DNA from: Chrysemys picta bellii | Lineage: Eukaryota | Reading direction: 5' to 3' | NCBI RefSeq assembly: GCF_011386835.1 | Contig: NC_088800.1 | Coordinates: 81,778,001-81,842,000, forward strand | DNA: 64,000 bases | In this document: piece after piece, positions 9,451 to 55,595 of the stretch | How positions within the stretch are numbered: the stretch's first letter is position 1 | Layout: the number at the start of each line of letters is the position of its first letter | Notes under the pieces: generated by a model | What the model saw: only the letters and a program-made list of their open reading frames with translations | Told to the model about the DNA's origin: nothing | The model's database searches: none | Position numbers and translations under genes: made by a program

Positions 9451-9849
9451 CGGTCCTTTGGGCTCGTGACTGTGAACCTGGGGTGGGGGAGAGGCTGAGA
9501 CTGAGCCCCAAGGACTGCGGGAGTTAGGGGTACCTGGAAACGGCGTGAAGCTGATCTCTAGGGGTGCTGAGAGCGTGGCTGGGGCTGAGACCGCTAATCC
9601 CGGGGGCTGAGAACTAAGGAATATGGGGAACTAACTTGCCAGGCACCTTGGATGAGGAGGGCTGACTCCCTCCCACCCCCCAGAGACCCAGAGGTGGGAG
9701 GACCTTAGCCCTGGACAGGGGTTGGGAAAGGAGGCAGTTCCTTTCGTGTGAGAAGCGTTTCTTCCCCTGATGGGTTTTGGTTGATCTTTTCAGTTTTGGG
9801 GTTGGGGGAAGGGTTCCCTTTTCCATGTCCTTTCACTCCACCTATAAAT

Positions 9850-25200: not shown

Positions 25201-28200
25201 AACTCTAGTGCGTTGGACGTCGCTGAGGCTGGGATATTGGAAGTTAAGCACTTGGGCTGTCCTACTCCCACGGACCATTGCAGTTATAACCACAATGCTG
25301 CGGGGAGCAAAAGTCGGGCCACAGGGTGGTGGAGCCGCCTGCCATGGGGCAGGGAAGTGCTCCGGCAAAGGCAGGGCTGGGAGAACAGGAACTATCCGAT
25401 GTCCAAAGGAACCAGGCCTACTAGCTAATGTGTCCTTCTTATTGGCTTGAGGTTCGCTGCTGTGTCTATGGCTCGGGCCACAACAACGTATTAGATGTCT
25501 GTATCGTTTCTGTGCGCCAAGCCCTGTGCTCAAACTCTCCCCGGATGGGTGGCTGGAGGAAGATCTCCCTGCACGTGTATCCTAAAAGGCTGTGTTATAA
25601 CAGAGCTCCGGCACTTTCTATAACCGTCGCAACCCAGCCTGAGTCTGTGGCCTTCACTAGGGTTGGGATCAGACCCCAGGCAATAGAAACGGCCTCATTT
25701 TCAGCAGGAAATGCAGTGGCTACCTGGTCGTTGTCCTTACCGGTGACGACATGGTAGCCCAGTGTGATCATAGTTGCAGACAGTGCCTTGCAGTTTGCGA
25801 CAACCTGCCATTGATAGGCTTTGAATTCCGGGGTCATGGCTTGCTTCAAAGTGACAGCGATTCCTGGGCAGAAAGGAAAAGCGTTGCGTCTCCAGGCTGG
25901 CAGCGGGACGCCAGGCTGCCCCGTGCCTGCAGTGACAACGAAACCCTGGCCTGGAAAGCTGAGAAACTAGAATCACGGCTGCAGATCTTTGCTCCACGAA
26001 GCACCTATTAGCTGTCAGTGCTGCAGGGTCCACGTCTACACTAGCTGTGTCTTACGAGTTCTAGTGAGAGGCCCAAGGGACTTGTGAACTCCATGGCGGA
26101 ATTTAATTCCATTTATACAGCTGCCACAATGTCACTAGCTAATGCCCAATGGTCTGATGGGTCAGTGTCACGGGCCCACTGCAGGGGGAGAGTTCTCCAG
26201 CGGGATTCCAGATTTCTGCAGCGCAGTGGCCAGATGGGTAGAGTGCAATTGTGTCTTTTGCGTGGTATCTTTCCCCCACCTCAGCACTGAATACCAAGAC
26301 GTAGATCTGGACTCTCCCCATTGGCGGAAAATCCCCTGCTGCCTATTTCTATCAATAGGGAGAGGAATGTGGGAATCCACAGAATAAAGGCTCTTCTTGC
26401 TGATCGACAGGAAGGGCTCGGCCAGGGGAGAAGGGTTCCAGCCAGAGGATGATGCTCTGCTGTTCTTTAGTGCCGGCTATCGGAGGATCTCAAAGCTCGC
26501 TGCAAACTGACTAGCCCTCCCGCCCTCTGAGCTGTAGGGCCATTGTACATCTGGGGAAAGAGGCAGAGAGGAATCTGACCCAGAATGACAGGAAGGCAGG
26601 GCTCCCCACTCTCATGCTGGGGCCTGCCTGTGGAGGTACCATCAGCCCTGGGTCGCTAGCCCCTGACCTTCACATCCCCATACACAGCCTTGGTCACCTT
26701 CAGTACTGGAGTTTTAGCTCCCATATGGTACAAGGTAAGAGGACGTACTAGAGACCAGCAGAATATTGGGCAGTGGGGGGGCTGCAAACTCGTCTGGGTG
26801 TTGGTCGGGGGGGGGGGGAGGGGCTCATCTGTGGGACCCTGCACTGGGCCCTGCCTCCCCAGCTTATGTGGCCTGGCAGGGACTCCTGTGTGGAGCCAAA
26901 TATCCCTTTGGCCATCAGCTGCAGTGGGCACCGTTAAGCAACAAGCGCATTTTCTCCTGTTTCAAGCCCTGCAACTTTGGCTGGAACTAGACACCCCCCG
27001 GCCCAGCGTTAAAGTTCAGCCCCTGAGCAGCCCTACAGGGCCCCTTACCTGCAATGGCATGGTTGTGAGGCCCTCCCTGAAGCCCTGGGAAGACAGCCTG
27101 GTTGATGAGGCTTTCCAGGTTGTATGGAATTTCCTTGCCAGTCTTGGGATCCATGCTGCGAGCTCCTAGGAGGGAAAGGGGATGGTCACTGTCTAAGGGG
27201 CACAGCTCACACATTCTTCATACAACTTCTCCCGTGTTCTATACCCGGGTGGGTTTAGATCAGTCTCGTTTTAACCCCGGGGGCGCTGGAGTCAGGATGT
27301 CACAGCGCTGAGCCCCAGCCGTGTGCTTGGAGCTGTGCAGAGCCCACTACGGCCTGTGGAACTTGCAAACTCAAAGCACAAGCGGGCACCAGCTGGGTGC
27401 TAGGCAGGAGGGGAGAGGAGGGTGGCGGGCTTAGGAGAGAGCTGCGGAGGGGTTTGAATGAGGAAAGGGTGACTGTGTAACCCACTCTGTGGTGCTCTGA
27501 CCCCTGTAAGGGGTGACGGGGCCACAGCCTGAGGCTGATGAACCTGCGACAGCCCTGCCGGATGAAGGTAGATCTTTTAACTTCGGCAGTAGAGGCTCAG
27601 GCCTTAAAATGCACAGCCCCCGGTTCAATCCCTGCTGCCCCGACCCAGGCCTGTACAGGGAATTGAGCTGGGCCGGGCAGGGGGCAGCATGGAGGAGCTC
27701 ACAAGGGAATGGCAAACCGGATTCATTGGCAAAGCCTGGCTCAGGGTGGAGGGAAGAGAGAGCAGAGAGGGAAGCCCGGCTGGGCAGAGCCGAGGAAGCC
27801 AGACTGAGAAGCTTTGCGAGAGGGTCATGATAAACCTGTCCAGCTCCACCCTGGGAGCATCACTGACCACATGCAGCCTGGGACTTAGTTAAATCTTATC
27901 GAACACGAGGGCCGCTCACGCTGAGGGATTGGTTCCAGGCAGGCTTCATGGGAAGCGTGTCCCCTACTGAATCGCCCACACCACTCCCTGGAACACCTAG
28001 TTCATCCTTGGGCATCTGCCAACCAAGTTGCTCACCCAGGCTGTCCCATTCATTTGGGGATCTAATACTGCCCTGGGAAAGACAAGCCCTTTCCCCCCTT
28101 CTCTGAAAGCTGCAATCTTGGCTTCCATGGCTCCCGCCAGCCAGAGAGAGGAGGAACCAGCCTTGGCTCCGATTTCGCACTAGCTCTAAGGTCCCCAAAT

Positions 28201-31200
28201 GGCCCGCCCGGGGCCTTTCATCCTCTGCTCGCTCCGTGGCCCAAACCTTTCCGATAGAAGATCATGCCGGCCCGGCAGCCTCTCAGCGTCTTGTGCGTCG
28301 TGGTCGACACAACGTCACAGTGTTCAAACGGCGACGGCACCACGCCGGCTGCCACCAAGCCGCTGATGTGGGCCATGTCGGCCAGGAGGTAAGCCCCGTT
28401 CTCATCCGCGATCTTCCGCATGCGGGCGTAGTCCAGGTTACGCGAGTAACAGCTGACGCCTGGGCCAGGAGAAAACACCAGCCTCAGGGCGGGTCTATGC
28501 TGTGTGATTGACACCCCTGAGTGAGTTAGCGGTGTAGCCGCGGCGGCACGGGCTGTACGACCCGCCCAAACCCTGGGTAATTAGTCAGGCAGCTCTCCCA
28601 GCACAAGACCACATGGAGGAAATATTTCAAAGTCCAGGAGCCAGACCATGGGAAGGGCCCAGGATTTGGCCATAGGAGGCCAGGGTGAGACAAGTGGCAG
28701 GAAAAGTCCCACTGCCCAGCAGGGAGAGGCAGACACCTGGTCCAGGCCACCGAAATAGCAGCTGCTAAACTGCCCCCCCCCCCCCCACGGTGCTTGGGCT
28801 CAGATCCAAACCAGTGCATCCCTGAGGAGCCTGAAGAGGGGGGAGTGACTTGGTGCTGGCCATGCAATGCATTGGTGGTGGCAGAACACCAGAATCCTGA
28901 CTCCTAGTCCCCCTCCCCAAGTCGCCGCAGTGTCCGCACAGAGGCGGCTCAGAACGTAAGTCAGGATGCTGCGTGCTTGCTGAAATTCGCCACGCTGCTC
29001 CCGAGTGCCTAGCCAGCGACTCAGCCCTGTGGCTGGGATCTTTCAATAGCCCGGAGGAAAGGAATCTACCTGCTGCCCAGAGCCTCCGACAGCTGCTTTT
29101 CCTTCCCCACCCACTTACCTGCTATGATCAACTTTGGGTGGAATAAGCGGGCGTTCTCCTCCAGCCGGTCGTAGTCGATATAGCCAGTGGTGGGATTGAC
29201 CTGGTAAGGGAGCAGCACGAAGAGACACGCAGGGTAAGCACCATGCACCTCTAGCCTGAGAGGAGAGACGGCTACATCTCGCTCTGCGGCAGCGCTCATC
29301 AGCTAACACTGTCCGCCCCAGCTGTCCCAGGAAGCCCTCGCCGAGTTAAAGGGTTAACGACGGCAGCTCCGTGACGGGTCTGCAGAGCAGACAGTGGCTA
29401 TTCTCTACTCCTGGGGTTGTCAGAGAGAACCTTCTGCACAGCCCTGCTCTGATCTCCCTGGCATCCTCCATTAAAGGGCCACAGGTCGAGTCAGCTGTTG
29501 ATGTCACACTGCAAGTTGTTACCAAATGCAGGAGGGAGCAACTGCCCCCCCCCCCCCCCCCCGCCGCCCATCTGTTCTCTGAGAACCCAGAACCCAAGGT
29601 CAGTGATTAATAGCCTAGGGTCACACTGAACAGTAACCAAATAGGCATTCAGGCTCAATATGGCAGCCCAAATACCACGCTAGCGAGAGAATTTGCCATG
29701 TTTAATAAGATGGAGCCTTTATAGAGCGGGTCAAAAACGTTAACACTGTCTGGGAACCAACGTGTGAAAGATGTAAATATCACTGTTCCCATTTGATAGA
29801 TAGCCACTTCGGTGCCTCAGTTTCCCTAACCCAGGGTCATCCACTTGAATCACTGGCAGAGCTGGCAACAGAAAGCAGCTCTCTTGAGTCCCGGGCGGAT
29901 GCTCAGCTCACACGTCCCTTGTGATTGGAATATAAAGGTGAGCGTAGCACGATCCTGGCTAACTCGTACTTCCACCCAGGTGAGCACTGTTTCATCGGGG
30001 GCTCCATCTCTGCTGAAATAACCCTGCCGTCGTTACTGGTGCGGCTCCAACTCACAGAGGAAGCTACTGGTAGAAGTTTGGGCAACTGCAGCAGAAGTTT
30101 TCACCCATGCCAGCTGGGTTCCCGGTGCAAACGCTGACTTAACCCACCCCTCAGAGGCTGGCCCAGCCTTTGTTCCATTCCCCCTTTGGGACAATGGCAC
30201 CAGAGGTGGACCGCTGCAAGCCTCCCACTTGAGCCCGGAGCCCCGTTCAGGGCTCAGCAGAGCCGCCACACACTGGGTGGGCCAGCAGGGCTCTGGAGAG
30301 ACAACTGGAGGGTTAAGGCCCTGAGCCAACGTCTATTGCAGCCAATAGAAAGACACCCTCCCCGCCCCCCATGCCTTCAGTGGGGCTTGGATCAGGCCCG
30401 GTGTATTTGTACTGTGGCCCATCAGCCTCCAGCACCACCATTTGCCTCAGGAAAACTATTTAACCCTTCGGTATCCACCATCTTAGCACACCCTCCTCTC
30501 TGCTAACACACCAAGAAATCCCAGCTCCCCAGGCAGGGCATGAAGCCAGCACAAGTAGCTTGCATGGAAGAGGAGTGACAATTGCTGGCCTCCACTGATC
30601 TCCTCCCAATCAGCCGGGATTTCCAAAGCCGGGTGGAGTCCCCTTACCTTGTAGGGCATGGATTCAAAGAAGATCGAGGTAGCCGAGATTTTCTTCTTGT
30701 CCGTCATGAAGCCGTGGGTCAGGTGCCCCCCGTCAGGCAAGTCCAGACCCATGATCCTGCCATGGGGCTCCACCAGGGCCGTGTATACCGCAAAGTTAGC
30801 GGGGGAGCCTACAACGAAAGGCAGCCCCTAAGCACACTGAGCCTTTGGTACCGCTGCTCTCGGAGGGGGGGGGCCAGGATCCGGGCTGTGACCTTGGGAA
30901 GGGGTTTTTAAAGCAGTCTCCTCTGAGCACCCCGACTTGTACCCAGCCCAGGAAGAGGGGCTGGGTTCTGGAACGCAGGGGTCCCAATGGCTCGGCAATT
31001 GGCAAGGCCATCCCCGTTCCCCTACTCCCAGGGAGGATCTGGGCTTTGTTACCTGAGTATGGCTGGACATTGACCCCCCATTTCTGTGGGTCCAGCCCGT
31101 AAGCCTCCAGCGCTCTCTTCTGGCAGAGGATCTCCAGCTCATCCACAAACTCCGTCCCGCCGTAGTACCTGCAACACGGACGAGAAGAGCAGGAGTCTCA

Positions 31201-33233
31201 CAGCATCAGCGCCGCCTCGCGTTTCCAGCCCCGACGCCAGTGGCAGAGTACAAGCTAACCGGACCCCTCTTCTCTCCCCCAGGGGTCTGGGCAGGAGCCG
31301 GCCTGATGCTCCACAGGCTCGGCAGGGACAGTCCTAGCAGGGAAGCTGCAGGCCGACGGCCCACGTTGGCCTCATTCTGCGAGGAGCGAAGTGCAGCCGG
31401 GTCTGTTACTGCCTCGGGAAAGGACCAATTTACAGCCGGTGGCTGCTTGGGCCCGTCACGGAGCAGCGATCGCTTCCTCAAGGACAGTGAGCCAAGCCAG
31501 GGACGGTTGGACTCTCTCCCACCCCCAGAAAACACCCTTTGGATGTGAATCCCCCCCACATTCCACACCTCTGTCCCGGGTACCCCTCCGAGTATTTATT
31601 GTTCATGCAGGAGCCCAGGGCCTCCAGAACCGCTCGGCTTGCAAAGTTCTCGGACGCAATCAGCTCCAACCCCAGCCTCTGGCGCCGCTTCTCTTTCTTG
31701 ATGAGGTCATACACCTTTAAGAGAGAAGAAGCCCCCTCCTTATCAGTCCTGTACAGAGCATCGGACGCTGGGAGGTGCGCTCTCATTTGTGTCTCCCCCC
31801 TCTACGATGGGGGACAGACGGGAGAATGGAAAGATACAGAGACATCCCGCCATGGACAAGGGAGGCAAGAATCCTCTCTCTTGTGCCTGTGAACCTGGAA
31901 CACCGGGCGTCGTTCTACCAGAAAGATACTGACAGACTGGAGCGCGTGCAGGGAAGAGCAAGAAGAGACCCGGGGAGGGAGGCTGACTCACTGCAGTTAA
32001 AAATAGAGCTTGGCTAAGGGTACATCTACACTACAGGGGGGAGTTGATTTAAGATACGCAAATTCAGCTACGTGAATAGCGTAGCTGAATTCGACGTATC
32101 GCAGCCGACTTACCCCGCTGTGAGGATGGCGGCAAAATCGACTTCTGCGGCTTTCTGTCGGCGGCGCTTACTCCCACCTCCGCTGGTGGAGTAAGAGCGC
32201 CGATTCGGGGATCGATTGTCGCGTCCCAACGAGACGTGATAAATCGATCCCCGAGAGGTCGATTTCTACCCGCCGATTCAGGCGGGTAGTGTAGACCTAG
32301 CCTAAGGGAATGTAGACGGGGGAGACACAAATCCACAAATATTGGGAAGATGATGAGAATACGCAGGACGGGGAGAAGTTATTTAGGGCAGTGCCAGGGG
32401 GAATAACCTAGGCCTAACACGATGAAATTAAGCACACGTTAGCCTGCATGTTAGAAGACGTTTCCCAAAAGTGAGCACTTGGAAGAACATTGATACTGAA
32501 CGGAGCAAGGCACTATGGAAGTGAAAATTGGCTGGAAGAAAGAAACAGGCGACTTTCTAATGGCTATAGATCTCCCCTTCTCATTTGCTCCATTGTCATG
32601 GAACAAGCTGCTAGATGCAAGGGCCACAGCTGTGCTCATTTCCATATAAATAATATCCGATCCCGTTTGGAAAAAAAGACCCTGGGCCTGAGAAATCTGG
32701 GATGAGACAATGAATAGAGCTATTATGTGGCACCGCTATAGGCCACCACATGGGAGCGTTGGGTTTGGAGGGAACTTCAGACTCACGGCAGCAGGGGCTG
32801 GGAACACCATGGAGGTAATGCTCCCAGTCACTGGTGAGGAGAGCTACCAAGCCCTCTCTTTTGCCACCCCTTTGGGGCTGCCGCGTGTGGCAGAGGGAAT
32901 GGGAAATGAGGTGAGTGGAGGCAAGTGACAACCCAGGACTGGATGACCAAACTTGGACTGACCCACCAGCCTGAGTCATTGCCTCAGGAAGATCAACATC
33001 CCTTTGGTTGCATGGGTCCCGGAGCTGGGAGGATGAATCAAGATCTCGTGCCACGAGTGCTTGGGTTTCCCCTCTGCCAAAATGCACACAACCCTTTCCC
33101 CACCACAAACGCTGGAAAAAAGCCTTCTCACCTCCGGGTCACTGGTATCAAGCGGCTCCATGACCATCTTGTTATGGGACATCCAGAGTTCAGCGCTGGG
33201 GAGCTCTCCATTGACATTGGTTAAGTGAGCCAT
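22127..33233 (-). CDS. SHMT1: Serine hydroxymethyltransferase 1 (cytosolic), complete; join complement(33132..33233,31569..31714,31053..31168,30648..30808,29119..29200,28247..28459,27049..27165,25741..25863,25060..25176,22879..22989,22127..22299), ~486 aa
   Basis: [52 protein letters not shown]-lysine motif [54 protein letters not shown]-terminus FPLPGLPVL*. No mitochondrial presequence; SMCR8 synteny identifies SHMT1 rather than SHMT2. Total 1461 nt. Confidence 0.97.
22879..22989 (-). CDS. SHMT1: SHMT1 coding exon 10 ([21 protein letters not shown]...)
   Basis: Acceptor AG 22991-22990; donor GTAAG 22878-22874. Confidence 0.95.
24030..24434. mobile_element. Non-autonomous TIR element (probably Harbinger-like)
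   Basis: Imperfect TIR AGGCTGCGATTCTGTCA vs reverse complement of right end AGGCTAAGATTTAGTCA; GC-rich interior; TSD unclear. Confidence 0.5.
25060..25176 (-). CDS. SHMT1: SHMT1 coding exon 9 ([38 protein letters not shown])
   Basis: Acceptor AG 25178-25177; donor GTGAG 25059-25055. Confidence 0.95.
25741..25863 (-). CDS. SHMT1: SHMT1 coding exon 8 ([28 protein letters not shown]...)
   Basis: Acceptor AG 25865-25864; donor GTAAG 25740-25736. Confidence 0.95.
27049..27165 (-). CDS. SHMT1: SHMT1 coding exon 7 ([38 protein letters not shown])
   Basis: Acceptor AG 27167-27166; donor GTAAG 27048-27044. Confidence 0.95.
28247..28459 (-). CDS. SHMT1: SHMT1 coding exon 6 (contains PLP-binding Lys, TTHKTLRG)
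   Basis: Acceptor AG 28461-28460; donor GT 28246-28245. Confidence 0.95.
29119..29200 (-). CDS. SHMT1: SHMT1 coding exon 5 ([27 protein letters not shown])
   Basis: Acceptor AG 29202-29201; donor GTAAG 29118-29114. Confidence 0.95.
30648..30808 (-). CDS. SHMT1: SHMT1 coding exon 4 ([32 protein letters not shown]...MPYK)
   Basis: Acceptor AG 30810-30809; donor GTAAG 30647-30643. Confidence 0.95.
31053..31168 (-). CDS. SHMT1: SHMT1 coding exon 3 ([38 protein letters not shown])
   Basis: Acceptor AG 31170-31169; donor GTAAC 31052-31048. Confidence 0.95.
31569..31714 (-). CDS. SHMT1: SHMT1 coding exon 2 ([24 protein letters not shown]...YPGQR)
   Basis: Acceptor AG 31716-31715; donor GT 31568-31567. 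Confidence 0.95.
31870..32420 (+). mobile_element. Degenerate CR1 ORF2 3' fragment with nested MITE
   Basis: ...[17 protein letters not shown]... resembles the CR1 RT C-terminal KDIDKLERVQRRAT motif; sequence resumes after the MITE. Confidence 0.6.
32018..32302. mobile_element. PIF/Harbinger-like MITE, 285 bp
   Basis: TAA TSD on both sides (32015-17, 32303-05); TIR GGGTACATCTACACTAC / GTAGTGTAGACCTAGCC; internal palindromes; many intact CpGs. Confidence 0.9.
33132..33233 (-). CDS. SHMT1: SHMT1 first coding exon ([34 protein letters not shown])
   Basis: ATG 33233; acceptor TTTTCAG ends at 33268; donor GTGAG 33131-33127; resembles human ..LWSSHDKMLAQPLKDSDVE. Confidence 0.9.
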
Positions 33234-35999: not shown

Positions 36000-36500
36000 G
36001 CTGCACCTGGCTCAGGGCCTCTCTAGACTACAGCCCCCGCGCTGGGAAAGGGCTGAGGGTCCCCGGTGGGAATCCGCCGCACTTACCAGGCTCCCAGCGC
36101 GCCGGGGCTGCCGCAGCTCGGAGCAGACTCAACCCACTCGCACCTAGAGCAGCACCATGCCCCCGCGCCCCGGGGCTGGAATCTTCAGACATGCCCCGCC
36201 TCCCTCTCAGCCAATCGCCGAGCAGCCCGCGGGCCCCGCGCAGGGAACCTTCGGAATCGCCTCAACCAATCGGAGGCGCGCGTGCCATCCGTCCCGCCCT
36301 CTGCCCCCACACTATTGGCCAAGCCGGGCCCGCCAGCCCCAGAGCAGCACGTGGGTGGGGGATGATGCTAGTGGGTTGCCAGAGCCCCTCGCCCGGGCCA
36401 CGTTGGGGGTGGCGAGGGAGGAGGAGGGGCCCGATGCCCAGCGGGAGGGGAGCATGGAGAGCCGCAGAGCTCCGCCGGCTCGCAGCATGCGGGAACGGGG
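36000..36500 (-). promoter_or_regulatory. SHMT1: SHMT1 CpG-island promoter and non-coding first exon (3' end at 36087)
   Basis: Minus-strand donor CTG|GTAAGT at 36087/36086; CCAAT at 36211 and 36266, ATTGG at 36314; GC boxes CCCCGCCTCC 36194 and TCCCGCCC 36292. Confidence 0.75.
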
Positions 36501-38372
36501 AGATCGACCCTAGCAGACAGCGTGGGGGTGGGGTAAATCCGCCTCTGGGTAGGCAAGGGGGATCTCCCCGCCGGCTGAGGAAGGGCGAGCTCTTTGCCTC
36601 TGGGAGCCTGGCCAACACCCAGAGCTCTTTACTATCCGGGTCCTCGCAGTGCATCGCTCCCCCTTCCCCCAGTAGGCACCTGCACTCATGCAACTGTTAC
36701 AGCCCCCACCCCTCCATCCGTGCCAATCCACAGAGACTAGCACTCAATGCAGCCAGAGCTGGCGCTAGGCATAAGCAGGCTAAGCAATTGCTTGGGGCCC
36801 TGCGCAGCTCAAGCTCCCCCCCATTAATTATTAGTATGTAGGGTGGGGGGCTATTCCAGCTTAGGGCCCCCAATGGGCTAGGATCGGCACTGCACAGCCC
36901 AGCTGCAATGGTTGCTCTGTAACTCAAGTTGCAGTTGCAGAAGCTTTACAGCTGTGCAGGTCACTGGTTCAGTCCCCAGTGTGTCAGCCAAGTGGGCAGC
37001 CGTCACGCAATATTAAGGATGTGATTTTGAATTAATGAACCCTAGAAGGGGGCCTCCGCAACTTCTGCAGGGGCCTGTGCGTCTCGCATGGCAGAGGAGG
37101 GAGATCGGAGATCGAAAGCAGTAAGAGCAGGTTCCCTCCTGTTCTCAGGAACGATTAAAAGGCCAGGAGGAAAAACTGCCCTTGATGCGGACAGACAGGA
37201 GGCTCAGGCAGATTGTACCCACCTCAGATGGTCTCTCGAGGCATCTGTCCCTTTGCGATCCGCTTGGGGAATTCTCTTTGACTTGTGAGCCCAATACAAT
37301 AGTGAATTGGGCCACATGTCCCCAGCATTACAGCTTCCACTCGGGATGGGGTTGGGTCACTTGGCACATTTTCACAGCTGCACCTTTGAGACATCTTTCA
37401 TCCTGCCAACTAAAGTGATTGCTTGGGACAACATCTCGGGACAGGCTATGGCCAGAGATGCCAATGGGTTAAATTCTACTCCCTGTAAATTGAGGAACAA
37501 GACAGTGGAATAAATGATGCCCCGTAAATTCCCCATGAACTCAGGCCATGGAAAGACCAAACAAGCTATCCTGAATCACTCTCAGAGCCACTCACTGTCT
37601 CGAAAGCTTCTTGACAATAAGCCCAGCGGCTGCACTGCTCACCGTGCCCAGAAGCTGAGAGCAGAGAAGCGGTGAGAGGCATAAGGCAGCGGTGAGTGGT
37701 CCCAAGTTAATCCGAGTGCCAGGAATTAAATGGGGGTGGGGGGCAGTGAAAAAAGCAGGAGGGGGCTGGGACTTCAAAAGGGGATTTGCTTGTAAATGGG
37801 AGATTATAATAAATTATTATACTTTGTACTGAAAGATGTATCCTAAAAGGCACCTTGCTGAAACAGAATTCAATTATAAAGCACCAGGTAACAGGATCAC
37901 TGAGGGCTAGAATAAGGTACCATATTCAGTGCATGAGACTCCGATCCTACCAGCATCTCTGGCGAGATGCAGGGCCATTCAGAGCATATTAGGGGAGGTG
38001 TGGGCAAGAGAGGTGTTTTTTTGGTAGCTTGCCCATGTCTGATTAATTTCCTGGGTAGTTTTCACATGGGCTATGATCCTGAGTCCACTGAAATTGATGG
38101 CAAAACATCCACTGATTTCTAGGGGACCAGGATTTCACCCATGACTTAGAGCAGTGAGAAGACCACATGCCCATCCTAAAATGTTCCATTTGGTAGTGAC
38201 CGTATCACACCGACTGAGAGAAAGAGTAGCTTCTGTGCCCAGTGTCAACACAGAGCCTAAGCCTCTAGGGTCTCCAGGACCCATTCAGTGCCAGCCTTTG
38301 GAATACCATCTCCTCCTAACTGGAGCGTCACCTGCGCGTAACCCTGCCACAAAAATGTGCTCCTTCTTGGAG

Positions 38373-38724
38373 GCAGCCATGCCAAACCCGTGAAAAAAAC
38401 ACAGAAATTGGGCTTGTTTTTGGCTTGTGAGTTGCTTGTTGGCTAGTTTTTGGCTTGTTGCTTGTTTGGCTTGTTGCTTCTTTTTTTTTTGATCGGCTCC
38501 CGGCAAGCAGGGGGAAGTGGGGGCAAAGGGGGAGAGAGTCAGGGGTGCACAGAGGACCCACCACAGTCCCAGACTGCACGCCGGGGGGATCTAGTCACCT
38601 AGAGTGTTGGGGCTTTTAGGGATTGGCTTGTTTTGGCCTTGTTTTGAAATGGGATTAGCTTGATTTTTAGCTTATTGTGAAAATCAGGGTGCTTATTTAC
38701 CGTGTGAAAGTTGGCAACTGTGCT
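38373..38724. mobile_element. Degenerate non-autonomous DNA element with GTTGGCAAC-type end and internal TTGGCTTG repeats
   Basis: Right end GTTGGCAACTGTGC, eroded left end CAGCCATGCCAAAC; internal low-complexity repeats. Confidence 0.45.
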
Positions 38725-39081
38725 TGGAGGGAAATAGAGACTTTTTGTGTGTAGCTTTCTTCTTTTTTGCTGTTAGAGGAGAAAAGCGTCCCGGTGCGAT
38801 TCTCCCTGTGAGTTGGGTATTGTGCTTTCAAAGTTTCCATTTATAGTAGTGGGGCTCCAAGGTGCTCCAATGGCGGCTGAACTTATGCCTGAACATCTTA
38901 TTTTAACTGTTGGACAAAATCAGGCACCAGATACAGGGCTCCTTTAGGACCAGTTTCAGCCCTCTGATATTCACACACAGGTCTTCCCTACTCTCAGCTG
39001 TGGCACCTCCTTTCTGGGATCACGGCCAAGGTACTTAAATACCTTATGTCTCACTTTCCCCATCAGTAACATAGGTCTACC

Positions 39082-39276
39082 TTTCAGAGTAGCAGCCGTG
39101 TTAGTCTGTATCTGCAAAAAGAACAGGAGAACTTGTGGCACCTTAGAGACTAACAAATTTATTAGAGCATAAGCTTTCGTGGATGCATGCATCCGAAGAA
39201 GTGGGCTGTAGTCCACGAAAGCTTATGCTCTAATAAATTTGTTAGTCTCTAAGGTGCCACAAGTACTCCTGTTCTT
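39082..39276 (+). mobile_element. Penelope-like terminal-repeat mini-insertion (copy 2) with hammerhead motif
   Basis: TSD ATAGGTCTACCTTT (39071-39084 / 39277-39290); 65-bp inverted repeat with 1 mismatch (39119-39183 / 39212-39276). Confidence 0.85.
39189..39228 (+). ncRNA. Minimal type-I hammerhead ribozyme motif (identical to 35189-35228)
   Basis: GCATCCGAAGAAGTGGGCTGTAGTCCACGAAAGCTTATGC. Confidence 0.7.
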
Positions 39277-39493
39277 ATAGGTCTACCTTTGTAAAGTGTT
39301 GTTGAGAGCCTCAGATGAAAAGCTCTAGATAAGCACTGTCAATACTAAATGTCAGTTATTTCCCAGATTCATGGTCTTACGGGTTTTTGGTGCGCTGTTG
39401 TTGGCAAAAATTCTCACCTCACACCGATTGCCCGGCAACTGCCAGTGCTGCAAATAATAGCAGAAGTGTTCTTGTCTAGTTGCAGGAGCCCAG

Positions 39494-40579
39494 ATGGTGA
39501 TGGAAAACGTCTCTTCCTCTTCGCTGTTCTCAACCAGCTCCACCACTCAGCATGAAAACTCCACTGTGTCCAATTACTTCTCTGGCCTCCAAAAGAGCAT
39601 GCATATCCTTTCCATGGTGGTCTACAGCCTTGCGTGTCTGCTGGGGGTGACGGGCAATGGCCTTGTCATCTGGATCGCTGGCTTCAAGATGAAGAAGACA
39701 GTAAATGCCGTGTGGTTTCTAAACCTGGCTGTTGCTGATTTCATCTTCACCTTTTTTCTGCCCTTCAGCATCGCCTACACTGCCCTGGGCTTTCACTGGC
39801 CATTTGGGAAGCTCTTGTGCAAACTGAACAGCACCATTGCCTTCCTCAACATGTTTGCTAGCGTCTTCCTCCTAACAGTGATCAGCATAGACCGGTGCAT
39901 TTCGGTGATTTGCCCTGTGTGGTCTCATAACCACCGGACACCAAAGTTGGCTTCCAACATTGCCCTGGTCACATGGGTCCTAGCCTTCATCATCAGCTCT
40001 CCGTATCTTGTTTTTCGAGACACGGCTACTAATTCGAAGAACGTCACCAGCTGTTACAATAACTTTGCCCTGTCTGATGACTATAAATCTGAGGCGACAC
40101 GTCGGCTGTGGAGAATGAGGCACAAAGCTATGATCGTAACCAGATTCTTATGTGGGTTCCTCATCCCCTTCACCGTGATCCTTGTCTGCTACAGCATCAT
40201 TGCCGTCAGGATGAAAAGGAGCCATCTAGCCAGGTCCACTAAGCCTTTCAGGATCATTGTTGCTGTCACAGTGTCTTTTTTCCTCTGCTATTTCCCGTAC
40301 CATGTCTTCTGCTTGCTGGAAATGTCTAAAAACTCTTCCAATCAGGAGCTGAAAATGGCCCTTTACATAGGGATCCCCTTGGTTTCCAGTCTTGCCTTCT
40401 TCAACAGCTGTATCAACCCCATCCTCTATGTCTTTGTGGGGCAGGACTTCAAGGAGAAGTTCCGACAGTCCATCCTCTCTGCCTTCGAGGGGGCCTTCAG
40501 TGAGGACTCCATCCTGACCACCCTGGCCAGCAAGAGAAAATCCAGAGCCACTTCTGAAGCAGAAATTCCGGGGGTTTAA
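39494..40579 (+). CDS. Chemerin-like receptor 1 (CMKLR1)-like class A GPCR, 361 aa, single coding exon
   Basis: Seven hydrophobic segments; GNGLVIW, KMKKTVNAVWFLNLAVADF, WPFG..LCK, DRC, VFRDT, CYNNF, TRFLCGF, NSCINPILYVFVGQDFK closely match recalled human CMKLR1; N-glycan sequons in the N-terminus; pyrimidine tract plus AG just upstream. Not assigned the CMKLR1 symbol because the synteny differs. Confidence 0.93.
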   Translation: MVMENVSSSSLFSTSSTTQHENSTVSNYFSGLQKSMHILSMVVYSLACLLGVTGNGLVIWIAGFKMKKTVNAVWFLNLAVADFIFTFFLPFSIAYTALGFHWPFGKLLCKLNSTIAFLNMFASVFLLTVISIDRCISVICPVWSHNHRTPKLASNIALVTWVLAFIISSPYLVFRDTATNSKNVTSCYNNFALSDDYKSEATRRLWRMRHKAMIVTRFLCGFLIPFTVILVCYSIIAVRMKRSHLARSTKPFRIIVAVTVSFFLCYFPYHVFCLLEMSKNSSNQELKMALYIGIPLVSSLAFFNSCINPILYVFVGQDFKEKFRQSILSAFEGAFSEDSILTTLASKRKSRATSEAEIPGV

Positions 40580-41677
40580 TCAGTAGCTAATGGCCCAAAT
40601 TTTAGTGGTAAGTTACAGGAGACCCAGTTCTGTCCTCTGCCATGCCAGTGCAGTTCCCGTGGATTTCAATCAGAGTCGTATTGTGTCACTGAAGGCAGAA
40701 ATGGGCTCTGGGTGTGTGATTTGCTCCAGTTTGGATGTGCGAAACCTAGGGTGACTTACACACCAAGGAGGTGAAACAGCTGGATGGAGCGGGGCTGTAG
40801 AATGAAAAGCAACTGACAGAGGGTTGTTAAATAAGTAGCAACCCCGTGCCACATACGCTTTACACTCTCCTGTTGGTTGTTTTTCCTGCTATTTCCCCCT
40901 TTTTCATTTCCCTCAGTGTGTAAGTCACACTCATTTTGACACACCCATGGAGGACCAGATCAGTGCAAGTTACTCTGTTTTTGCCACTTCTGCTCATTGT
41001 TAACTTGAAACATAAGCACTGAATGTGGCCCAGAGAATGTAATGGCAGCTGGGTTATACCCAGTCTGCACTTGGCCCGTTACATCTAGATAAAGTTTGTC
41101 TGTTTTATTGCCCTGCCTTCACTGATACCTGCTGTAGCGTTCCCTTGGAAAAAAGCCAATATTTGCTTAGCAAAATGTGTTCCACAATACCCATGTTTAA
41201 AAGATGAAGATGCCATTTCAGGTTTCCTTTACCAGCAGTCAGACCGTACCAGTCATCAGTTCCGCGTTGCTCACCTTCTGTATAACATCCAGGACCTGAA
41301 GAGCCAACCCTTTAGGCCTAATGGCTTGTGTACTGTTATTTTGTTGGTCCCCTGACAGGTCTCCCAGCGTCTTCCTTATCTTATCAGGGTTCCCCGTAAA
41401 GAAATATTAGGATCCTCTCCACAGTGACTCATTTAACAAATGTCTTCTGTCCAGCGTAGCCTCGGGGATCACCTTGTGGATTCTGATGCAATACACCCAG
41501 GGCGAAACCCCACTTATATTTACAGCTGTGTAGCCTCATTGACTTCACCTGACTTCGGTCGGGTGGCAGGAGCGTAGCGGTAGCTGTTGCCAAGTGTCCT
41601 ACAAACTGCTCTTTGCAGAGGTCCCAAAATGCTTGGGTGCCACTAAGTGGCAACATGGTGCATTGCTGCTCCTATAT

Positions 41678-41804
41678 ATGCAACCGAAGAAGTGGGCTGT
41701 AGTCCACGAAAGCTTATGCTCTAATAAATTTGTTAGTCTCTAAGGTGCCACAAGTACTCCTGTTCTTTTTGCGGATACAGACTAACATGGCTGCTACTCT
41801 GAAA
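41678..41804 (+). mobile_element. Penelope-like solo terminal repeat (copy 3) with hammerhead motif at 41680-41719
   Basis: TSD CCTATATAT (41671-79 / 41805-13); same sequence as the direct arm of copies 1-2, ending CTACTCTGAAA; stem I reads GCAA rather than GCAT; AATAAA at 41723-28. Confidence 0.85.
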
Positions 41805-41864
41805 CCTATATATATATATGTACACACACAGAGGAGAAAGGGGGAAGATATTCTGATAAGTCCT

Positions 41865-41961
41865 AGAGAGTCCTGTTAGAGAGTCCTGTGGCACCTTTAA
41901 GACTAACAGATGTATTGGAGCATAAGCTTTCGTGGGTGAATACCCACTTTGTCAGACGCAT
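41865..41961 (-). mobile_element. Penelope-like terminal repeat, second subfamily (copy 4), hammerhead motif on minus strand 41959-41920
   Basis: Reverse complement GCGT CTGACAA A GTGGG TATTCA CCCAC GAA AGCT T ATGC followed by ..TGTTAGTCTTAAAGGTGCCAC; imperfect flanking duplication (T/C)CTGATAA(G/A)TCCT. Confidence 0.75.
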
Positions 41962-44900
41962 GTCCTGATAAATCCTGTTTACAAATAAGTGAGATCAGCA
42001 GATGTGAAGATCCTTTTTCATGTCATGTACTATTATCTGGTGCACTGGTCCTAGTGAACTAGAGGCTTAGGAGAAAATAACCGGTTCAGCAAAAAGGTGG
42101 CTGGAAGACATTGTATTATTGATCCTCTTCGCATTGTGTCCTTATCCTCGTTGATGCTATTGTGTATGGGCACGATCCAAAATGTACTGAAGTCAATAGA
42201 AAGGATTCCTTTACTCCCAGGAGTAATCCCTTTTGAGTTAATGGGACTACTCATGTGAGTAAAGTGATGTGTTTTTGCAGGACCAGGACTCTAGGTAGTA
42301 AAACTATATAATTTTCCTCCCAATATATACTGGGATGTGGACTAATAGCTGTGCCCTGTTACTCAGGTTTGATATAAAATACACGTTTTTCTGACTGGCA
42401 GCTCTCAATGTTAGACATTTTACTGTCTCTCAAATAGCTGAGACCTGATCGTTTGTACTTCACGTAATGAATGTTAAAAATCAATAAAAACATTTAAAAA
42501 CACACATCCTGTGGATCTAATGACTGTCGTGCCACCCTGTGCTGAAATGCATGGAAATACTCAATGATCACAACTGACCATGCAAGTTCACCTTGGGCAG
42601 TGGAACAACTAACCAAAACAGCCGAACCATCCGGAGACCACTGGTGTTAGGGGCAAAACTGAAGTAAATGGGGCTCCAACCTGGGCTCAGGGATCTGTGC
42701 ATGTGGGTCCAATTGCAAGACTGGGCTCCTCGCTTATGAGTTGATCTCAGTGGTTTTGATACATTGGAAAACCAGTGGGTTGCAAATGACGAAATAATAC
42801 CCCCCTTATGCCTCCAGGTTGTATCTGCTTGAGCGTCAGACTGGAAGCTGCTGCGAATGAGGGTTTTGGTTTTTGTTCAGCAGGAGTGATCAGTCTTTGG
42901 CCAGGTTTATTTTTTAGAAGGGAAAACCTATGATCAGGAAAGGCATTTCAGCATAGAGTGAGATGCTGGTCTAGGAGGCCGTCATGCCCTGTCCTTGTGT
43001 AACTTGTCCTCCGCTGCCTTTCCCTTCACCTAGCAGGTTTGGGAAACCCCGATGTTCAATAGCAGTCTGTTAATCCAAGTGAGAAAAAAGAGCATAAATT
43101 ATATCTGCTCTGCTCTCCCTACCTGTTAATATGGTTCGCACACATATGAACACGTTGTGTGGCTGCCTAGAATGAGAACTGTCACTCACATACATGTAGG
43201 GAGCCAGTAGGGGTCCACTGACCTATGCAGTATTTAACAGAATTAATGCAGACATTGATCCTTCCAATGCTTAACTTTAAGCATGTGAGTAATTCCATTG
43301 AACTCAGTGGGACTAGTCACAAAGTCAAGCACCCTGGTAAGCGCTTGCAGGGCTGGGTTCAGAGAGAGTTGACCTTTGCCAGCAATTGCTGACTGTTCTC
43401 CAGATCAAACTGCACCCGACAAGTGCAGTGTTTGTTCTGCAGTATGCAACTGAGGGGATATTTACTTACTCCCAGAGGTGAACTGCAGTATCAAGGTTGT
43501 TCAGACCAGCATTTGACCTCCTTGATTTTTACTTATGTTTGCAAAGTCCATGTAATTCCTACAGAGGAGTGGCTCTCACAGCACAGACCTTGGCACTTCT
43601 GATCCCGGCTCTGACTCTCTGACACAGATTCTCTGGACTAGCTACACTATGTTTGGCAGAAATCCAGAGGAGGAGGCCCCAATCCCAAGGCCTCTGGGCA
43701 CTGACCCAGTCCCCAACATAAAAGTGAGCAGCCTTCAGGGGGTATTTCGGCAGCAGGGTTCTGGGTGCCCCCACAACAGCCCTTTGTCCCACGAAGTGGC
43801 ACAACCACAAAGCAGCCTTTATGAACCACAGACTCCAGCTCCCCATGTGACAGAGAGAAAATGACTTAGGCCAAACTGTGCAACCATGGGTACCTAACAT
43901 TAATTGCCTAGATTTGTATTAATTTCAGTGGGAGCAGCAGGTGCCCAGTGCCTTTGAAAATCAGGCAACTTATTCAGGTGCCTAACTTTGTTGCCCAAAT
44001 ATGAAAATGTAGGACTCAACAGCTCTATGCCTCAGTGTCCATACCTGTAAAACGGGGATAATACATACCCTGCAGCATGTCTCAAGGGTGCGGTGAGGCT
44101 TAGTTATTATTTGTAATGCAGTAGTGCCTAGAAAGAAAGAAAATACACTAGTGTCTCAAAACAGTAAATCAAGCCCCACAAAACCCCTGTATGGTAGGTA
44201 TTATTACCCTCAGGAACTTAGATGTTAGTGTTAGGCATTATAGAAAACCCTATGGCAGACTAAAATCTTAGGGGTAAACTAAGGCACGGAAAGGTTTTAA
44301 TGTTCCAAGGGTCACACAAAGTCAGAAATAGAATCCTGGAATTCTACCTACCAGTCCCATGTCCCCACTTGACCCACCTCCTTTCTTGCCATCATTTACC
44401 TTTGCCCTCATTAACCCCCACTCACCCTGTCCTCTGCCTAAACATGCCTCCTTACAGACCTCTTTGTCAATTCATCCCACCCTGAACTTGGTGCCTTCTT
44501 TCAGGCCTCCTTGTATGCTCCAGAAGGCTTCCCCATAATGCCTGCCAGGTGCCCCATCTTCAAATCACTTCCAAAAAAACATGCGTTCTGAAGAGCGTAC
44601 CAGTGATAATATCCACGTGCCAGGATTGTTCACAGGTGCCAAGCACCCTCATGTCCCCTCCCTAGTCCATTATATACTGCCTTCTCCTGATGCCAGTGTC
44701 CCATTCTGACAGCAGTGTTGCCCCTCTGCTGAGCAGCAACAGATGTCTGAGGCCTTCCAGGTGGCTTCCCAGTGGAGAAGAAATCAGTGATGCCTGGGTG
44801 TATTCTAAGTGTAACTTGGGTCATTAACACACATACTCCAGGCCTGGAACAGAGGTGGTCAAACAGCACAGCAGGCAATCCCTTTTTCCAGGACTCTCAG

Positions 44901-55473: not shown

Positions 55474-55595
55474 TAGGGTGACCAGATGTCCCAATTTTAT
55501 AGGGACAGTCCCGATTTTTGGGTCTTTTTCTTATATAGGCTCCTATTACCCTCCACCCCGTCCTGATTTTTCACATTTGCTATCTGGTCACCCTA
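55474..55595. mobile_element. 122-bp MITE
   Basis: Perfect 14-bp TIR TAGGGTGACCAGAT / ATCTGGTCACCCTA. Confidence 0.85.

What the first reader, a model, noticed from the sequence alone, without database searches (positions are those of the whole stretch)
39494..40579. Intact CMKLR1 paralogue at a locus where I know of no human counterpart
Seen: an uninterrupted 361-aa 7TM ORF with CMKLR1 signature blocks. Residues I recall as chemerin-peptide contacts in CMKLR1 appear kept (VFRD Arg 4.64, TRF Arg 5.42, LLE Glu 6.58, ECL2 xNNF), but the TM6 toggle is CYFP rather than CWxP. Known: human CMKLR1 is on 12q, GPR1/CMKLR2 on 2q and GPR33 on 14q, none next to SHMT1/PRPSAP2. Inference: an additional chemerin or chemoattractant receptor retained in sauropsids and lost in (at least some) mammals, possibly an ohnologue; ligand and function probably uncharacterised.
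Basis: partly seen in the sequence, partly recalled or inferred. Interest (0 to 1): 0.7.

Follow-up and report, generated by a model that had tools for sequence, protein, structure and literature searches.

The report
Second chemerin-type receptor beside SHMT1
Turtles and birds carry, next to SHMT1, an intact and transcribed receptor gene that databases call CMKLR1 but that is a separate old paralogue with no recognisable mammalian counterpart, so its ligand and role are still unknown.

Summary
Window 39494-40579(+) is an uninterrupted 361-aa class A GPCR whose best solved relative is human CMKLR1. It lies between SHMT1(-) and PRPSAP2(+).

The gene belongs to a strongly supported clade of turtle, crocodilian, bird and squamate proteins ("clade A", 100/100). 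Turtles and birds also have a true CMKLR1, which groups with mammalian CMKLR1 (99/94) and in crane lies beside a WSCD2-like gene. An AU test rejects clade A as a recent sauropsid copy of CMKLR1 (p = 0.0002). No mammal appears among the 120 best hits listed.

The gene is functional. dN/dS is 0.13-0.20, and a spliced contig with a GT..AG intron plus poly-A RNA contigs cover it. The polar chemerin-peptide anchors are kept. The deep pocket differs, and W6.48Y (CYFP) is fixed in all 25 clade A sequences sampled and in no other clade.

Three caveats apply:
- Deep branching is unresolved, so FPR-type (AU p = 0.18) or GPR33-type (p = 0.049) receptors could be diverged mammalian kin.
- A 2019 survey's provisional orphan "GPR192" probably already covers this lineage.
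- The ligand is untested.

On other DNA of this genome the scan noted a second chemerin gene, a possible partner that I did not check.

The parts
37340..37691 (+). Non-coding 5' exon (at least this part) of the receptor transcript. It lies at the edge of the G+C-rich stretch (36-38 kb, GC 0.57) between this gene and the SHMT1 5' end.
   Evidence: A 2,792-nt contig in run X1 lies on 37340-37690 and then jumps to 39479. The donor GTGAGT starts at 37692.
37692..39479 (+). Intron of 1,788 nt with GT..AG ends. It holds one copy of a high-copy hairpin repeat (39071-39276).
   Evidence: The joint 37690->39479 is reported as 'skips 1788, GT..AG (cut +1)'. The sequence was read.
39480..39493 (+). 5'UTR part of the coding exon, 14 nt before the ATG.
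   Evidence: The acceptor ...ttcttgtctag ends at 39479 and the ATG is at 39494.
39494..40579 (+). Complete coding sequence in one exon: 361 aa plus stop. It encodes a class A chemoattractant-type GPCR. Key codons: DRC 39890-39898, R175 (4.64) 40016-40018, R217 (5.42) 40142-40144, T259 (6.41) 40268-40270, Y266 (6.48) 40289-40291, E276 (6.58) 40319-40321, NPILY 40415-40429.
   Evidence: dN/dS is 0.20 and 0.13.
40580..42302 (+). 3'UTR; the end is approximate. It holds the second copy of the hairpin repeat (41678-41962).
   Evidence: Poly-A RNA run X9 has contigs tiling 39680-42212. The X1 contig reaches 42115. X10 has a contig at 42129-42302. No depth is seen beyond 42515.
22128..33233 (-). SHMT1 coding exons. 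This is the upstream neighbour, head-to-head with the receptor.
   Evidence: tblastn of chicken SHMT exon ORFs gives 57-96% identity. The same SHMT(-)/GPCR(+) arrangement is seen in chicken and Gopherus evgoodei.
9748..12183 (+). Large first exon of an SMCR8-type gene.
   Evidence: An 811-aa ORF with a Pfam Folliculin domain, E = 2e-9.
60442..60567 (+). First coding exon of PRPSAP2, the downstream neighbour.
   Evidence: phmmer against PDB gives PRPSAP2 (2JI4) at E = 8.4e-10 and PRPSAP1 at E = 0.037.

Best explanation
This is a working gene for a rhodopsin-class chemoattractant-type receptor. It is the sauropsid member ('clade A') of a CMKLR1-like lineage that is separate from the true CMKLR1.

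Shown:
- It is a two-exon gene with the whole coding sequence in exon 2. It is transcribed and spliced, and it has been under purifying selection since turtles and birds diverged.
- It lies head-to-head with SHMT1 in turtles and chicken.
- It coexists with a true CMKLR1 in the same species.

Inferred:
- It probably signals through Gi-type G proteins, because the DRC and NPxxY motifs are intact as in CMKLR1.
- It probably recognises a peptide or protein ligand that inserts a C-terminal carboxylate. The receptor keeps R5.42, the residue that salt-bridges the ligand's C-terminal Ser in the CMKLR1-C9 structure. It also keeps R4.64, E6.58, Y6.51 and the ECL2 Cys and Asn.
- Chemerin, or a chemerin paralogue, is the leading candidate ligand. 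The rebuilt deep pocket (A3.32, F3.33, F7.43, F in ECL1, L7.31) and the fixed TM6 changes (I6.41T, W6.48Y) predict different ligand selectivity or different activation behaviour from CMKLR1.
For: Gene and family:
- Intact 361-aa ORF with a full-length 7tm_1 match.
- Closest solved protein is human CMKLR1, 332 bits.
- Orthologues at 96% (tortoise), 83% (gharial, crane), 80% (chicken) and 65-78% (squamates).

Phylogeny:
- Careful ML trees give clade A 100/100 and true CMKLR1 99/94, with its own mammals, turtles and birds. The amniote node of true CMKLR1 has 100/99.
- An AU test rejects clade A plus sauropsid CMKLR1 as one clade (p = 0.0002).
- The caecilian true CMKLR1 scores 416 bits against human CMKLR1. 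Clades A, B and C score 321-334.

Synteny:
- SHMT(-) is followed by GPCR(+) in the window, in Gopherus evgoodei and in chicken.
- Crane true CMKLR1 sits beside a WSC-domain gene.

Selection and expression:
- dN/dS is 0.13-0.20.
- A spliced GT..AG contig, poly-A RNA contigs, and near-identical small contigs in runs of the window's own species cover the gene.

Residues:
- The residue table is, and clade-A-only fixed residues are.
- Published contact residues and mutagenesis come from PMC10089180.
Against: - No ligand or signalling data exist for any member, so coupling and ligand class are inferred from conserved residues only.
- Five of the published hydrophobic or aromatic C9 contacts differ (L3.32A, I7.43F, Y-ECL1-F, F7.31L, F-ECL2-Y).
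- Trp6.48 is replaced. This could mean altered or weak G-protein activation.
- Runs X1, X6 and X10 are only guessed to be RNA. All expression evidence comes from assembled contigs, so levels and tissues are unknown.
- SHMT1 linkage was not seen within 10 kb in the gharial or gecko loci.
- Whether the mammal-free clades form one group is unstable between trees.
Confidence: 0.8

Rival explanations
1. Mammals did not lose this lineage. A fast-evolving, relocated mammalian family (FPR1-3/GPR32, or GPR33) is the co-orthologue of clade A or of the wider mammal-free group.
For: - AU tests do not reject clade A plus the FPR-like group (delta lnL 14.5, p = 0.18).
- They only marginally reject clade A plus the GPR33-like group (delta lnL 6.9, p = 0.049).
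- The backbone of the family tree has 32/42 support.
- Ensembl/UniRef names the fish and coelacanth members 'Formyl peptide receptor 1'.
- Clade B scores relatively high against human FPR2, 290 bits.
- The cartography paper roots FPR/GPR32 on a turtle sequence.
Against: - The best ML trees pair the FPR-like group with a separate frog group (88/89 and 87/64), not with clade A.
- The coelacanth has both a GPR33-like protein (P0185) and a protein of the mammal-free lineage (P0045).
- Clade A lacks the FPR1 formyl-peptide triad, with F3.33 and M5.38.
- Human FPR and GPR33 loci are not at 17p11.2. This is general knowledge and was not tested here.
Confidence: 0.2
2. It is the true CMKLR1 orthologue, moved next to SHMT1 in sauropsids or moved away in mammals.
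For: - NCBI names it 'chemerin-like receptor 1' in every sauropsid.
- Human CMKLR1 is its best solved match.
- An AU test on 110 rows does not reject clade A as sister to the whole true CMKLR1 clade (p = 0.21). Even that topology would make it an old paralogue, not the orthologue.
Against: - The same species carry a second gene that groups with mammalian CMKLR1 (99/94; amniote node 100/99).
- Crane true CMKLR1 keeps a WSC-domain neighbour.
- An AU test rejects clade A plus sauropsid CMKLR1 (p = 0.0002).
- The window protein is only 50-54% identical to turtle true CMKLR1, against 83% to crane clade A.
Confidence: 0.02
3. It is an atypical, non-G-protein-signalling scavenger or presenter receptor, in the manner of CCRL2, C5AR2 or the weakly coupling CMKLR2. 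On this reading the W6.48Y and I6.41T changes disable the activation switch.
For: Tyr at 6.48 and Thr at 6.41 are fixed in all 25 clade A sequences and absent from the 65 others compared. Position 6.48 sits directly under the ligand's Phe8 in the CMKLR1 structure (PMC10089180).
Against: - DRC (the same triplet as in human CMKLR1), NPILY and Y6.51 are intact.
- Aromatic substitutions at 6.48 occur in signalling class A receptors. This is general knowledge.
- No loss of ICL2 or ICL3 features was seen.
Confidence: 0.12
4. It is a decaying or neutrally drifting duplicate whose open frame survives by chance.
For: None beyond low contig depth in the RNA runs.
Against: - The 361-362-aa frame is intact in tortoise, gharial, chicken and other birds, and at 351-377 aa in most squamates listed.
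- dN/dS is 0.13 over a dS of about 1 against chicken.
- A spliced transcript exists.
Confidence: 0.01

Closest known systems
CMKLR1 (chemerin receptor 1, ChemR23), human structure 7YKD
   Same: - Best solved match (332 bits), aligned without large gaps over residues 36-348.
- Single coding exon, DRC and NPxxY motifs.
- Polar ligand anchors R4.64, R5.42, E6.58, Y6.51 and ECL2 Cys/Asn are kept, as are F2.53, L2.57 and M3.36.
   Different: - It is not the orthologue. Turtles and birds have their own true CMKLR1.
- Only about 50-54% identical to turtle true CMKLR1.
- The neighbours are SHMT1 and PRPSAP2, whereas crane true CMKLR1 lies next to a WSC-domain (WSCD2-like) gene.
- The pocket differs: A3.32, F3.33, F7.43, F-ECL1, L7.31, Y7.32.
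- Trp6.48 is replaced by Tyr.
Provisional orphan 'GPR192' of the 2019 vertebrate GPCR cartography (PMC6504862)
   Same: GPR192 is described as gar and fishes (annotated fpr1), plus coelacanth, amphibian, reptile and bird genes, with no mammals listed, and 'probably divided into subtypes'. This matches the make-up of the mammal-free clades found here. It also matches the 'Formyl peptide receptor 1' names on their fish and coelacanth members.
   Different: - Identity rests on description only. Ensembl identifiers could not be mapped to sequences here.
- The paper gives no locus, expression, constraint or residue analysis.
- It does not separate the SHMT1-linked clade A from clades B and C.
Turtle/squamate clades B and C (also named 'chemerin-like receptor 1')
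   Same: Same family, 57-62% identical, with the same changed pocket residues A3.32, F3.33 and aromatic 7.43. No mammals were found with a clade C query.
   Different: - They form tandem arrays at another locus. Two GPCRs lie 7 kb apart in Gopherus flavomarginatus. B and C share one 237-kb contig in Emydura and one ~25 Mb chromosome in Pelodiscus and Emys.
- They keep Trp6.48.
- No bird members appear in the hit lists.
Formyl peptide receptors FPR1/FPR2
   Same: Same chemoattractant GPCR super-group. R5.42 is shared. FPR2 is the second-best solved match at 272 bits.
   Different: - The D3.33-R5.38-R5.42 triad that reads the formyl group is absent, with F117 and M213 in its place.
- The best trees do not pair them, although the AU test cannot exclude it.

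Membership tests
Class A (rhodopsin-like) GPCR | Seven-transmembrane 7tm_1 domain with the D/ERY-type and NPxxY motifs | tested here: met
   Pfam PF00001 match at E = 5e-53 over residues 54-312, covering profile positions 1-260 of 260. DRC at 133-135 and NPILY at 308-312.
CMKLR1 orthology group | Groups with mammalian CMKLR1 to the exclusion of other paralogues | tested here: not met
   The true CMKLR1 clade (99/94) holds mammals plus its own turtle and bird members. Clade A lies outside it. An AU test rejects clade A plus sauropsid CMKLR1 (p = 0.0002).
CMKLR1 orthology group | Conserved neighbourhood (WSCD2 next to CMKLR1) | tested here: not met
   The window gene lies between SHMT1 and PRPSAP2. 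Crane true CMKLR1 lies 9 kb from a 564-aa WSC-domain gene. The human WSCD2-CMKLR1 adjacency is general knowledge.
Chemerin receptors (functional class) | Residues that contact the chemerin C-terminal nonapeptide in the CMKLR1 structure, with mutagenesis support (R4.64, R5.42, E6.58) | tested here: inconclusive
   The three residues with mutagenesis support are kept (R175, R217, E276). So are Y6.51, F2.53, L2.57, M3.36 and ECL2 C/N. L3.32, I7.43, Y-ECL1, F7.31, F-ECL2 and W6.48 are replaced.
Chemerin receptors (functional class) | Binds and responds to chemerin | not testable with these tools
   No binding or signalling data were found for any clade A member. Avian studies used the true CMKLR1.
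Formyl peptide receptors | D3.33-R5.38-R5.42 triad for the N-formyl group (PMC10089180, comparing with the FPR1 structure) | tested here: not met
   The window has F117 (3.33) and M213 (5.38). Only R217 (5.42) is present. The same holds across clade A.
Formyl peptide receptors | Groups with mammalian FPRs in a tree | tested here: inconclusive
   The best trees pair the echidna-containing FPR-like group with a frog group. The AU test does not reject clade A plus FPR-like (p = 0.18).
GPR33 | Groups with GPR33 | tested here: inconclusive
   The GPR33-like group (coelacanth GPR33 plus three unnamed representatives) is not sister to clade A in the best tree. The AU p value is 0.049. No named mammalian GPR33 was available.
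CMKLR2 (GPR1) | Groups with CMKLR2 | tested here: not met
   The CMKLR2 group (frog CMKLR2 plus two representatives, 100/99) is separate in all trees. Human CMKLR2 scores 266 bits against 332 for CMKLR1. No AU test was run for this pairing.
Provisional orphan GPR192 (PMC6504862) | Fish members annotated fpr1; coelacanth, amphibian, reptile and bird members; no mammals | tested here: met
   The composition and the names match. Mapping by identifier was not possible.

The most novel reading that the evidence does not exclude
Sauropsids run a second chemerin-type signalling axis that mammals lack. On this reading the SHMT1-linked receptor, with its rebuilt deep pocket and Tyr6.48/Thr6.41 switch, is the dedicated receptor for chemerin or for a diverged chemerin paralogue. 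One candidate is the second painted-turtle chemerin with a rewritten C-terminal peptide that the scan noted elsewhere in this genome. Its pharmacology would be distinct from CMKLR1 and CMKLR2. Avian chemerin physiology, which has been studied only through the true CMKLR1, would then miss one receptor.
Probability: 0.3. Interest if true: 0.65.

Novelty: new member of a known kind. Interest (0 to 1): 0.5.

Why it matters
**Naming.** Databases give the same name, 'chemerin-like receptor 1', to at least two unrelated loci in birds and to four or more in turtles. Orthology-based transfer of mammalian CMKLR1 biology to sauropsids is therefore unsafe.

**Avian chemerin research.** Chemerin is actively studied in poultry reproduction and embryo development. 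The published chicken primers target the true CMKLR1, so this second, conserved receptor has not been measured.

**Receptor evolution.** The chemoattractant receptor family is thought to have had more members in early jawed vertebrates than humans retain. This gene is a concrete, well-conserved, testable example.

**Receptor mechanism.** The gene offers a natural experiment on the class A activation switch. Trp6.48 has been replaced by Tyr, with Thr at 6.41, and both changes are fixed in every turtle, crocodilian, bird and squamate sequence sampled.

Tried and rejected
- **Bit scores against human structures.** Clade A scores 332, C 334, B 321 and the anuran clade 297 against human CMKLR1. These could not tell which clade is the orthologue. 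The question was solved only after a caecilian protein with human-like C-terminal motifs scored 416 bits and was used as a query.
- **Homologue searches with clade A and clade C queries.** Neither returned a mammal among the 120 hits listed.
- **The 50%-identity representative library.** It gave no mammalian CMKLR1, because that protein is merged under other representatives.
- **Naming the GPR33-like representatives (P0203, P0219, P0267).** This failed. I chose not to fetch DNA for proteins of unknown, possibly primate, origin.
- **Synteny beyond turtles and chicken.** Frog, gar, two teleosts, gharial and gecko loci show no SHMT within 10 kb. One squamate protein was not on record.
- **Monophyly of the 'mammal-free lineage'.** It had 97* support in a quick tree but not in the careful trees, so I do not claim it.
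- **Hammerhead ribozyme cassette around the ORF (note s1-325702).** Rfam finds no hammerhead at gathering score in 34-43 kb, nor at E <= 1 in 38.9-42.2 kb. The flanking elements are hairpin repeats.
- **The idea that avian 'CMKLR1' papers had studied this gene.** Rejected by the primer tests.
- **Pfam on the PRPSAP2 exon.** It gave nothing. The PDB sequence search identified the exon.
Full report
**1. The observation**

Window 39494-40579 on the plus strand is one open frame of 361 codons starting with ATG. It gives a full-length match to the rhodopsin-family 7TM profile (PF00001, E = 5e-53, profile positions 1-260 of 260). Against all solved structures its best match is human CMKLR1 (332 bits, residues 36-348 aligned to 39-351). 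N-formyl peptide receptor 2 follows at 272 bits and CMKLR2/GPR1 at 266 bits.

The neighbourhood is also as described:
- An 811-aa ORF with a Folliculin/longin domain (SMCR8 type) lies at 9748-12183(+).
- SHMT1 exons lie on the minus strand at 22128-33233.
- An exon at 60442-60567(+) matches human PRPSAP2 (PDB 2JI4, E = 8e-10) far better than PRPSAP1.

The window holds no N.

**2. Which gene is it?**

Public protein sets hold close relatives that NCBI calls 'chemokine-like' or 'chemerin-like receptor 1':
- Gopherus evgoodei at 96%.
- Gharial and whooping crane at 83%.
- Chicken at 80%.
- Squamates at 65-78%.

I call this set clade A. A second tier of turtle and squamate proteins with the same name is only 55-62% identical. 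These are clades B and C. They are local duplicates at another locus:
- Two receptors lie 7 kb apart in Gopherus flavomarginatus.
- B and C share one 237-kb contig in Emydura.
- B- and C-type genes share one ~25 Mb chromosome in Pelodiscus and Emys.

No mammal is among the best 120 hits listed for either a clade A or a clade C query. Scores against human CMKLR1 did not discriminate: A 332, C 334, B 321, anuran clade 297.

The key came from a caecilian protein (P0140) that shares human-specific C-terminal motifs. It scores 416 bits against human CMKLR1 and nothing else at E <= 1e-75. Used as a query, it retrieved the true CMKLR1 group:
- Placental and marsupial mammals.
- Frogs, salamanders and caecilians.
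- Tuatara and squamates.
- Many turtles (Chelydra, Emydura, Pelodiscus, Lepidochelys, Malaclemys and others).
- Birds (tinamou, pigeon, crane, woodpecker, zebra finch, hummingbirds).

Single species therefore hold both genes on different chromosomes: Grus americana (P0003 and P0400), Dryobates (P0011 and P0394) and Poecile (P0007 and P0379).

**3. Trees and tests**

A careful maximum-likelihood tree of 110 proteins (LG+C20 by PMSF, 380 columns) gives these supports:

| Group | Support |
|---|---|
| Clade A | 100/100 |
| True CMKLR1 | 99/94 |
| Amniote node of true CMKLR1 | 100/99 |
| Clade B | 100/98 |
| Clade C | 100/99 |
| B + C | 90/94 |

The echidna-containing FPR-like group pairs with a separate frog group (88/89). 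The backbone joining these groups is unresolved (32/42).

A cleaner 59-row tree confirms each clade but changes their order. There, true CMKLR1 and CMKLR2 nest among the slowly evolving mammal-free clades. I therefore do not claim that clades A, B, C and the amphibian and fish clades form one group.

| AU test (held together as one clade) | Delta lnL | p |
|---|---|---|
| Clade A + sauropsid true CMKLR1 | 203.6 | 0.0002 (rejected) |
| Clade A + whole true CMKLR1 clade | 17.7 | 0.21 (not rejected) |
| Clade A + FPR-like group | 14.5 | 0.18 (not rejected) |
| Clade A + GPR33-like group | 6.9 | 0.049 (borderline) |

The second topology would still make clade A an old paralogue.

So the gene is certainly not the CMKLR1 orthologue and not a recent copy of it. 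Sequence alone cannot say whether some fast-evolving mammalian family descends from the same ancestral gene.

**4. Synteny**

The SHMT(-)/GPCR(+) head-to-head arrangement of the window recurs in Gopherus evgoodei and in chicken (record CM028495.1, 15.3 Mb). The crane true CMKLR1 lies 9 kb from a 564-aa WSC-domain gene. This fits WSCD2, which to my knowledge is the neighbour of human CMKLR1. Synteny and phylogeny therefore agree.

Gharial, gecko, frog, gar and two teleost loci show no SHMT within 10 kb. The linkage is demonstrated only for turtles and a bird.

**5. Is it a working gene?**

- **Constraint.** dN/dS is 0.20 against the tortoise orthologue (97% nucleotide identity). It is 0.13 against chicken, where dS is about 1.
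- **Splicing.** In run X1, from a related species about 5% diverged, one 2,792-nt contig lies on 37340-37690. It skips 1,788 nt with GT..AG ends and resumes at 39479. It then runs through the whole ORF into the 3' region up to 42115.
- **Splice sites.** The donor GTGAGT starts at 37692. The acceptor is a pyrimidine tract ending in AG at 39479, 14 nt before the ATG. A spliced form on the ORF's strand shows a processed transcript.
- **Other RNA evidence.** A poly-A RNA-seq run of another related species (X9) has contigs tiling 39680-42212. Two runs of the window's own species (X6, X10) have short contigs with 0-2 differences inside the gene.
- **Limits.** All of these are assembled contigs, and three of the four runs are only guessed to be RNA. 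Presence is shown, but not level or tissue.

The gene model is: a non-coding exon ending at 37691, an intron at 37692-39479, and a coding exon from 39480 with a 3'UTR reaching about 42.2-42.3 kb.

**6. What the residues say about mechanism**

The CMKLR1-C9 structure paper (PMC10089180) reports two sets of contacts:
- **Polar contacts:** R178 (4.64), E283 (6.58) and R224 (5.42). R224 forms a salt bridge to the C-terminal Ser. Alanine substitutions of these residues drop potency by orders of magnitude.
- **Hydrophobic contacts:** F88, L92, Y103, L119, M123, Y276, F190, F294, L298 and I306. Ligand Phe8 sits just above W273 (6.48).

Aligned to a 373-aa gibbon CMKLR1 with the same numbering:
- **Kept in the window protein:** R175, R217, E276, Y269 (6.51), F85, L89, M120, and ECL2 C187 and N189.
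- **Changed:** A116 for L3.32, F117 at 3.33, F302 for I7.43, F100 for Y-ECL1, L290 for F7.31, Y188 for F-ECL2.

Most of these changes are shared with clades B and C and with the amphibian and fish clades.

Two TM6 changes are unique to clade A. Y266 replaces W6.48 in 25 of 25 clade A sequences and in 0 of 65 others. T259 replaces I/V6.41 in 25 of 25 and in 0 of 65. The FPR1 formyl-peptide triad is absent (F3.33, M5.38).

My reading, marked as inference, is this. The receptor takes a ligand with a free C-terminal carboxylate in the CMKLR1 manner, and chemerin or a chemerin paralogue is the first candidate. Its deep pocket and activation switch have been remodelled, so selectivity, efficacy or basal activity probably differ. 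DRC and NPILY are intact, which argues for G-protein coupling rather than a pure decoy.

**7. What is already known**

The 2019 cartography of vertebrate rhodopsin-like GPCRs lists a provisional orphan, GPR192 (PMC6504862). It is made of gar and fish genes 'annotated as fpr1' plus coelacanth, amphibian, reptile and bird genes. No mammals are listed, and it is 'probably divided into subtypes'.

This matches the clades found here and the 'Formyl peptide receptor 1' names on their fish and coelacanth members. I could not map identifiers.

A 2024 study infers that the CMKLR1/FPR/GPR1/GPR33 super-group grew from 1 to 11 genes in the jawed-vertebrate ancestor (PMC10792014). Lineages missing from mammals are therefore expected.

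I found no paper that places a member at the SHMT1 locus, shows its constraint or expression, or notes the Tyr6.48 signature.

The chicken chemerin literature uses qPCR primers (PMC7408590) that do not match the chicken clade A locus even with three mismatches. The peptides those primers encode (VNAIW, FNIFLP) occur in bird true CMKLR1 and not in clade A. The forward primer hits the crane true CMKLR1 coding sequence with three mismatches. The clade A gene therefore appears unstudied in birds.

Zebrafish 'Fpr1' is under 40% identical to mammalian FPR1. That paper's authors attribute their results to species-specific formyl-peptide receptor activity (PMC6465576).

**8. Leads from the scan's own notes**

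I did not check it. It is a natural candidate partner for one of the extra receptors.
- Note s1-325702 reads the two repeats flanking the ORF as a hammerhead cassette. I confirm two copies of a hairpin-forming, very high-copy element at 39071-39276 and 41678-41962. Rfam finds no hammerhead there at gathering score or at E <= 1.

**9. Verdict**

This is an intact, expressed and constrained CMKLR1-like paralogue linked to SHMT1 in turtles and birds. It is distinct from the true CMKLR1 that the same animals also have, and it has no recognisable mammalian orthologue.

It is a new, uncharacterised member of a known receptor kind. Three points temper it:
- The lineage probably already has a provisional listing (GPR192).
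- Deep relationships are unresolved, so 'lost in mammals' and 'ohnologue' remain open.
- There is no ligand evidence.

No human contig was fetched, and no spliced model had to be joined, because the coding sequence is in one exon.

Noticed in passing
window 39071-39276 and 41678-41962: Two copies of a hairpin-forming repeat bracket the ORF, one in the intron and one in the 3'UTR. One hairpin has 65-nt arms that are 98% complementary. Contig depth in the (probable) RNA runs reaches tens of thousands there, so the family is very abundant in those data. Rfam gives only sub-threshold miRNA-like hairpin hits and no hammerhead.
   Followed up: partly
window 36000-38000: A G+C-rich stretch (GC 0.57) lies between the SHMT1 5' side and the receptor's non-coding exon 1 (37340-37691). 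It might act as a promoter shared by the two genes. No start sites could be mapped from contigs.
   Followed up: no
window 56800-57400: A very G+C-rich block (GC 0.64) upstream of the PRPSAP2 exon carries overlapping ORFs on both strands with a reiterated 'GWGMGS / VGDGF' peptide pattern. It looks like a degenerate tandem repeat in a G+C-rich island, not a gene. No Pfam hit was found for the long ORFs at 55588-56757(-) and 56876-57388(+).
   Followed up: partly
public proteins P0077, P0270, P0282 (Chrysemys) and P0342 (Malaclemys), versus the window: Pond turtles have at least five separate genes that NCBI names 'chemerin-like receptor 1': clade A, a B type, two C-type or other genes, and the true CMKLR1. 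Birds have two. The shared name hides old paralogy.
   Followed up: partly
hit lists: Clades B and C have turtle, tuatara, alligator and squamate members but no bird among the listed hits. This suggests birds lost that tandem cluster while keeping clade A and the true CMKLR1.
   Followed up: no
P0030 / P0031 (Anolis sagrei): There are two nearly identical clade A proteins on two different large contigs (110 Mb and 85 Mb). This is either a recent duplication or an assembly duplicate.
   Followed up: no
L008 (Salarias fasciatus) 10001-15881: The teleost member of the fish clade sits in tandem with a second 7TM gene and next to a trypsin-like protease, with no SHMT. The SHMT1 linkage may therefore have arisen later, or it lies beyond 10 kb.
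   Followed up: no
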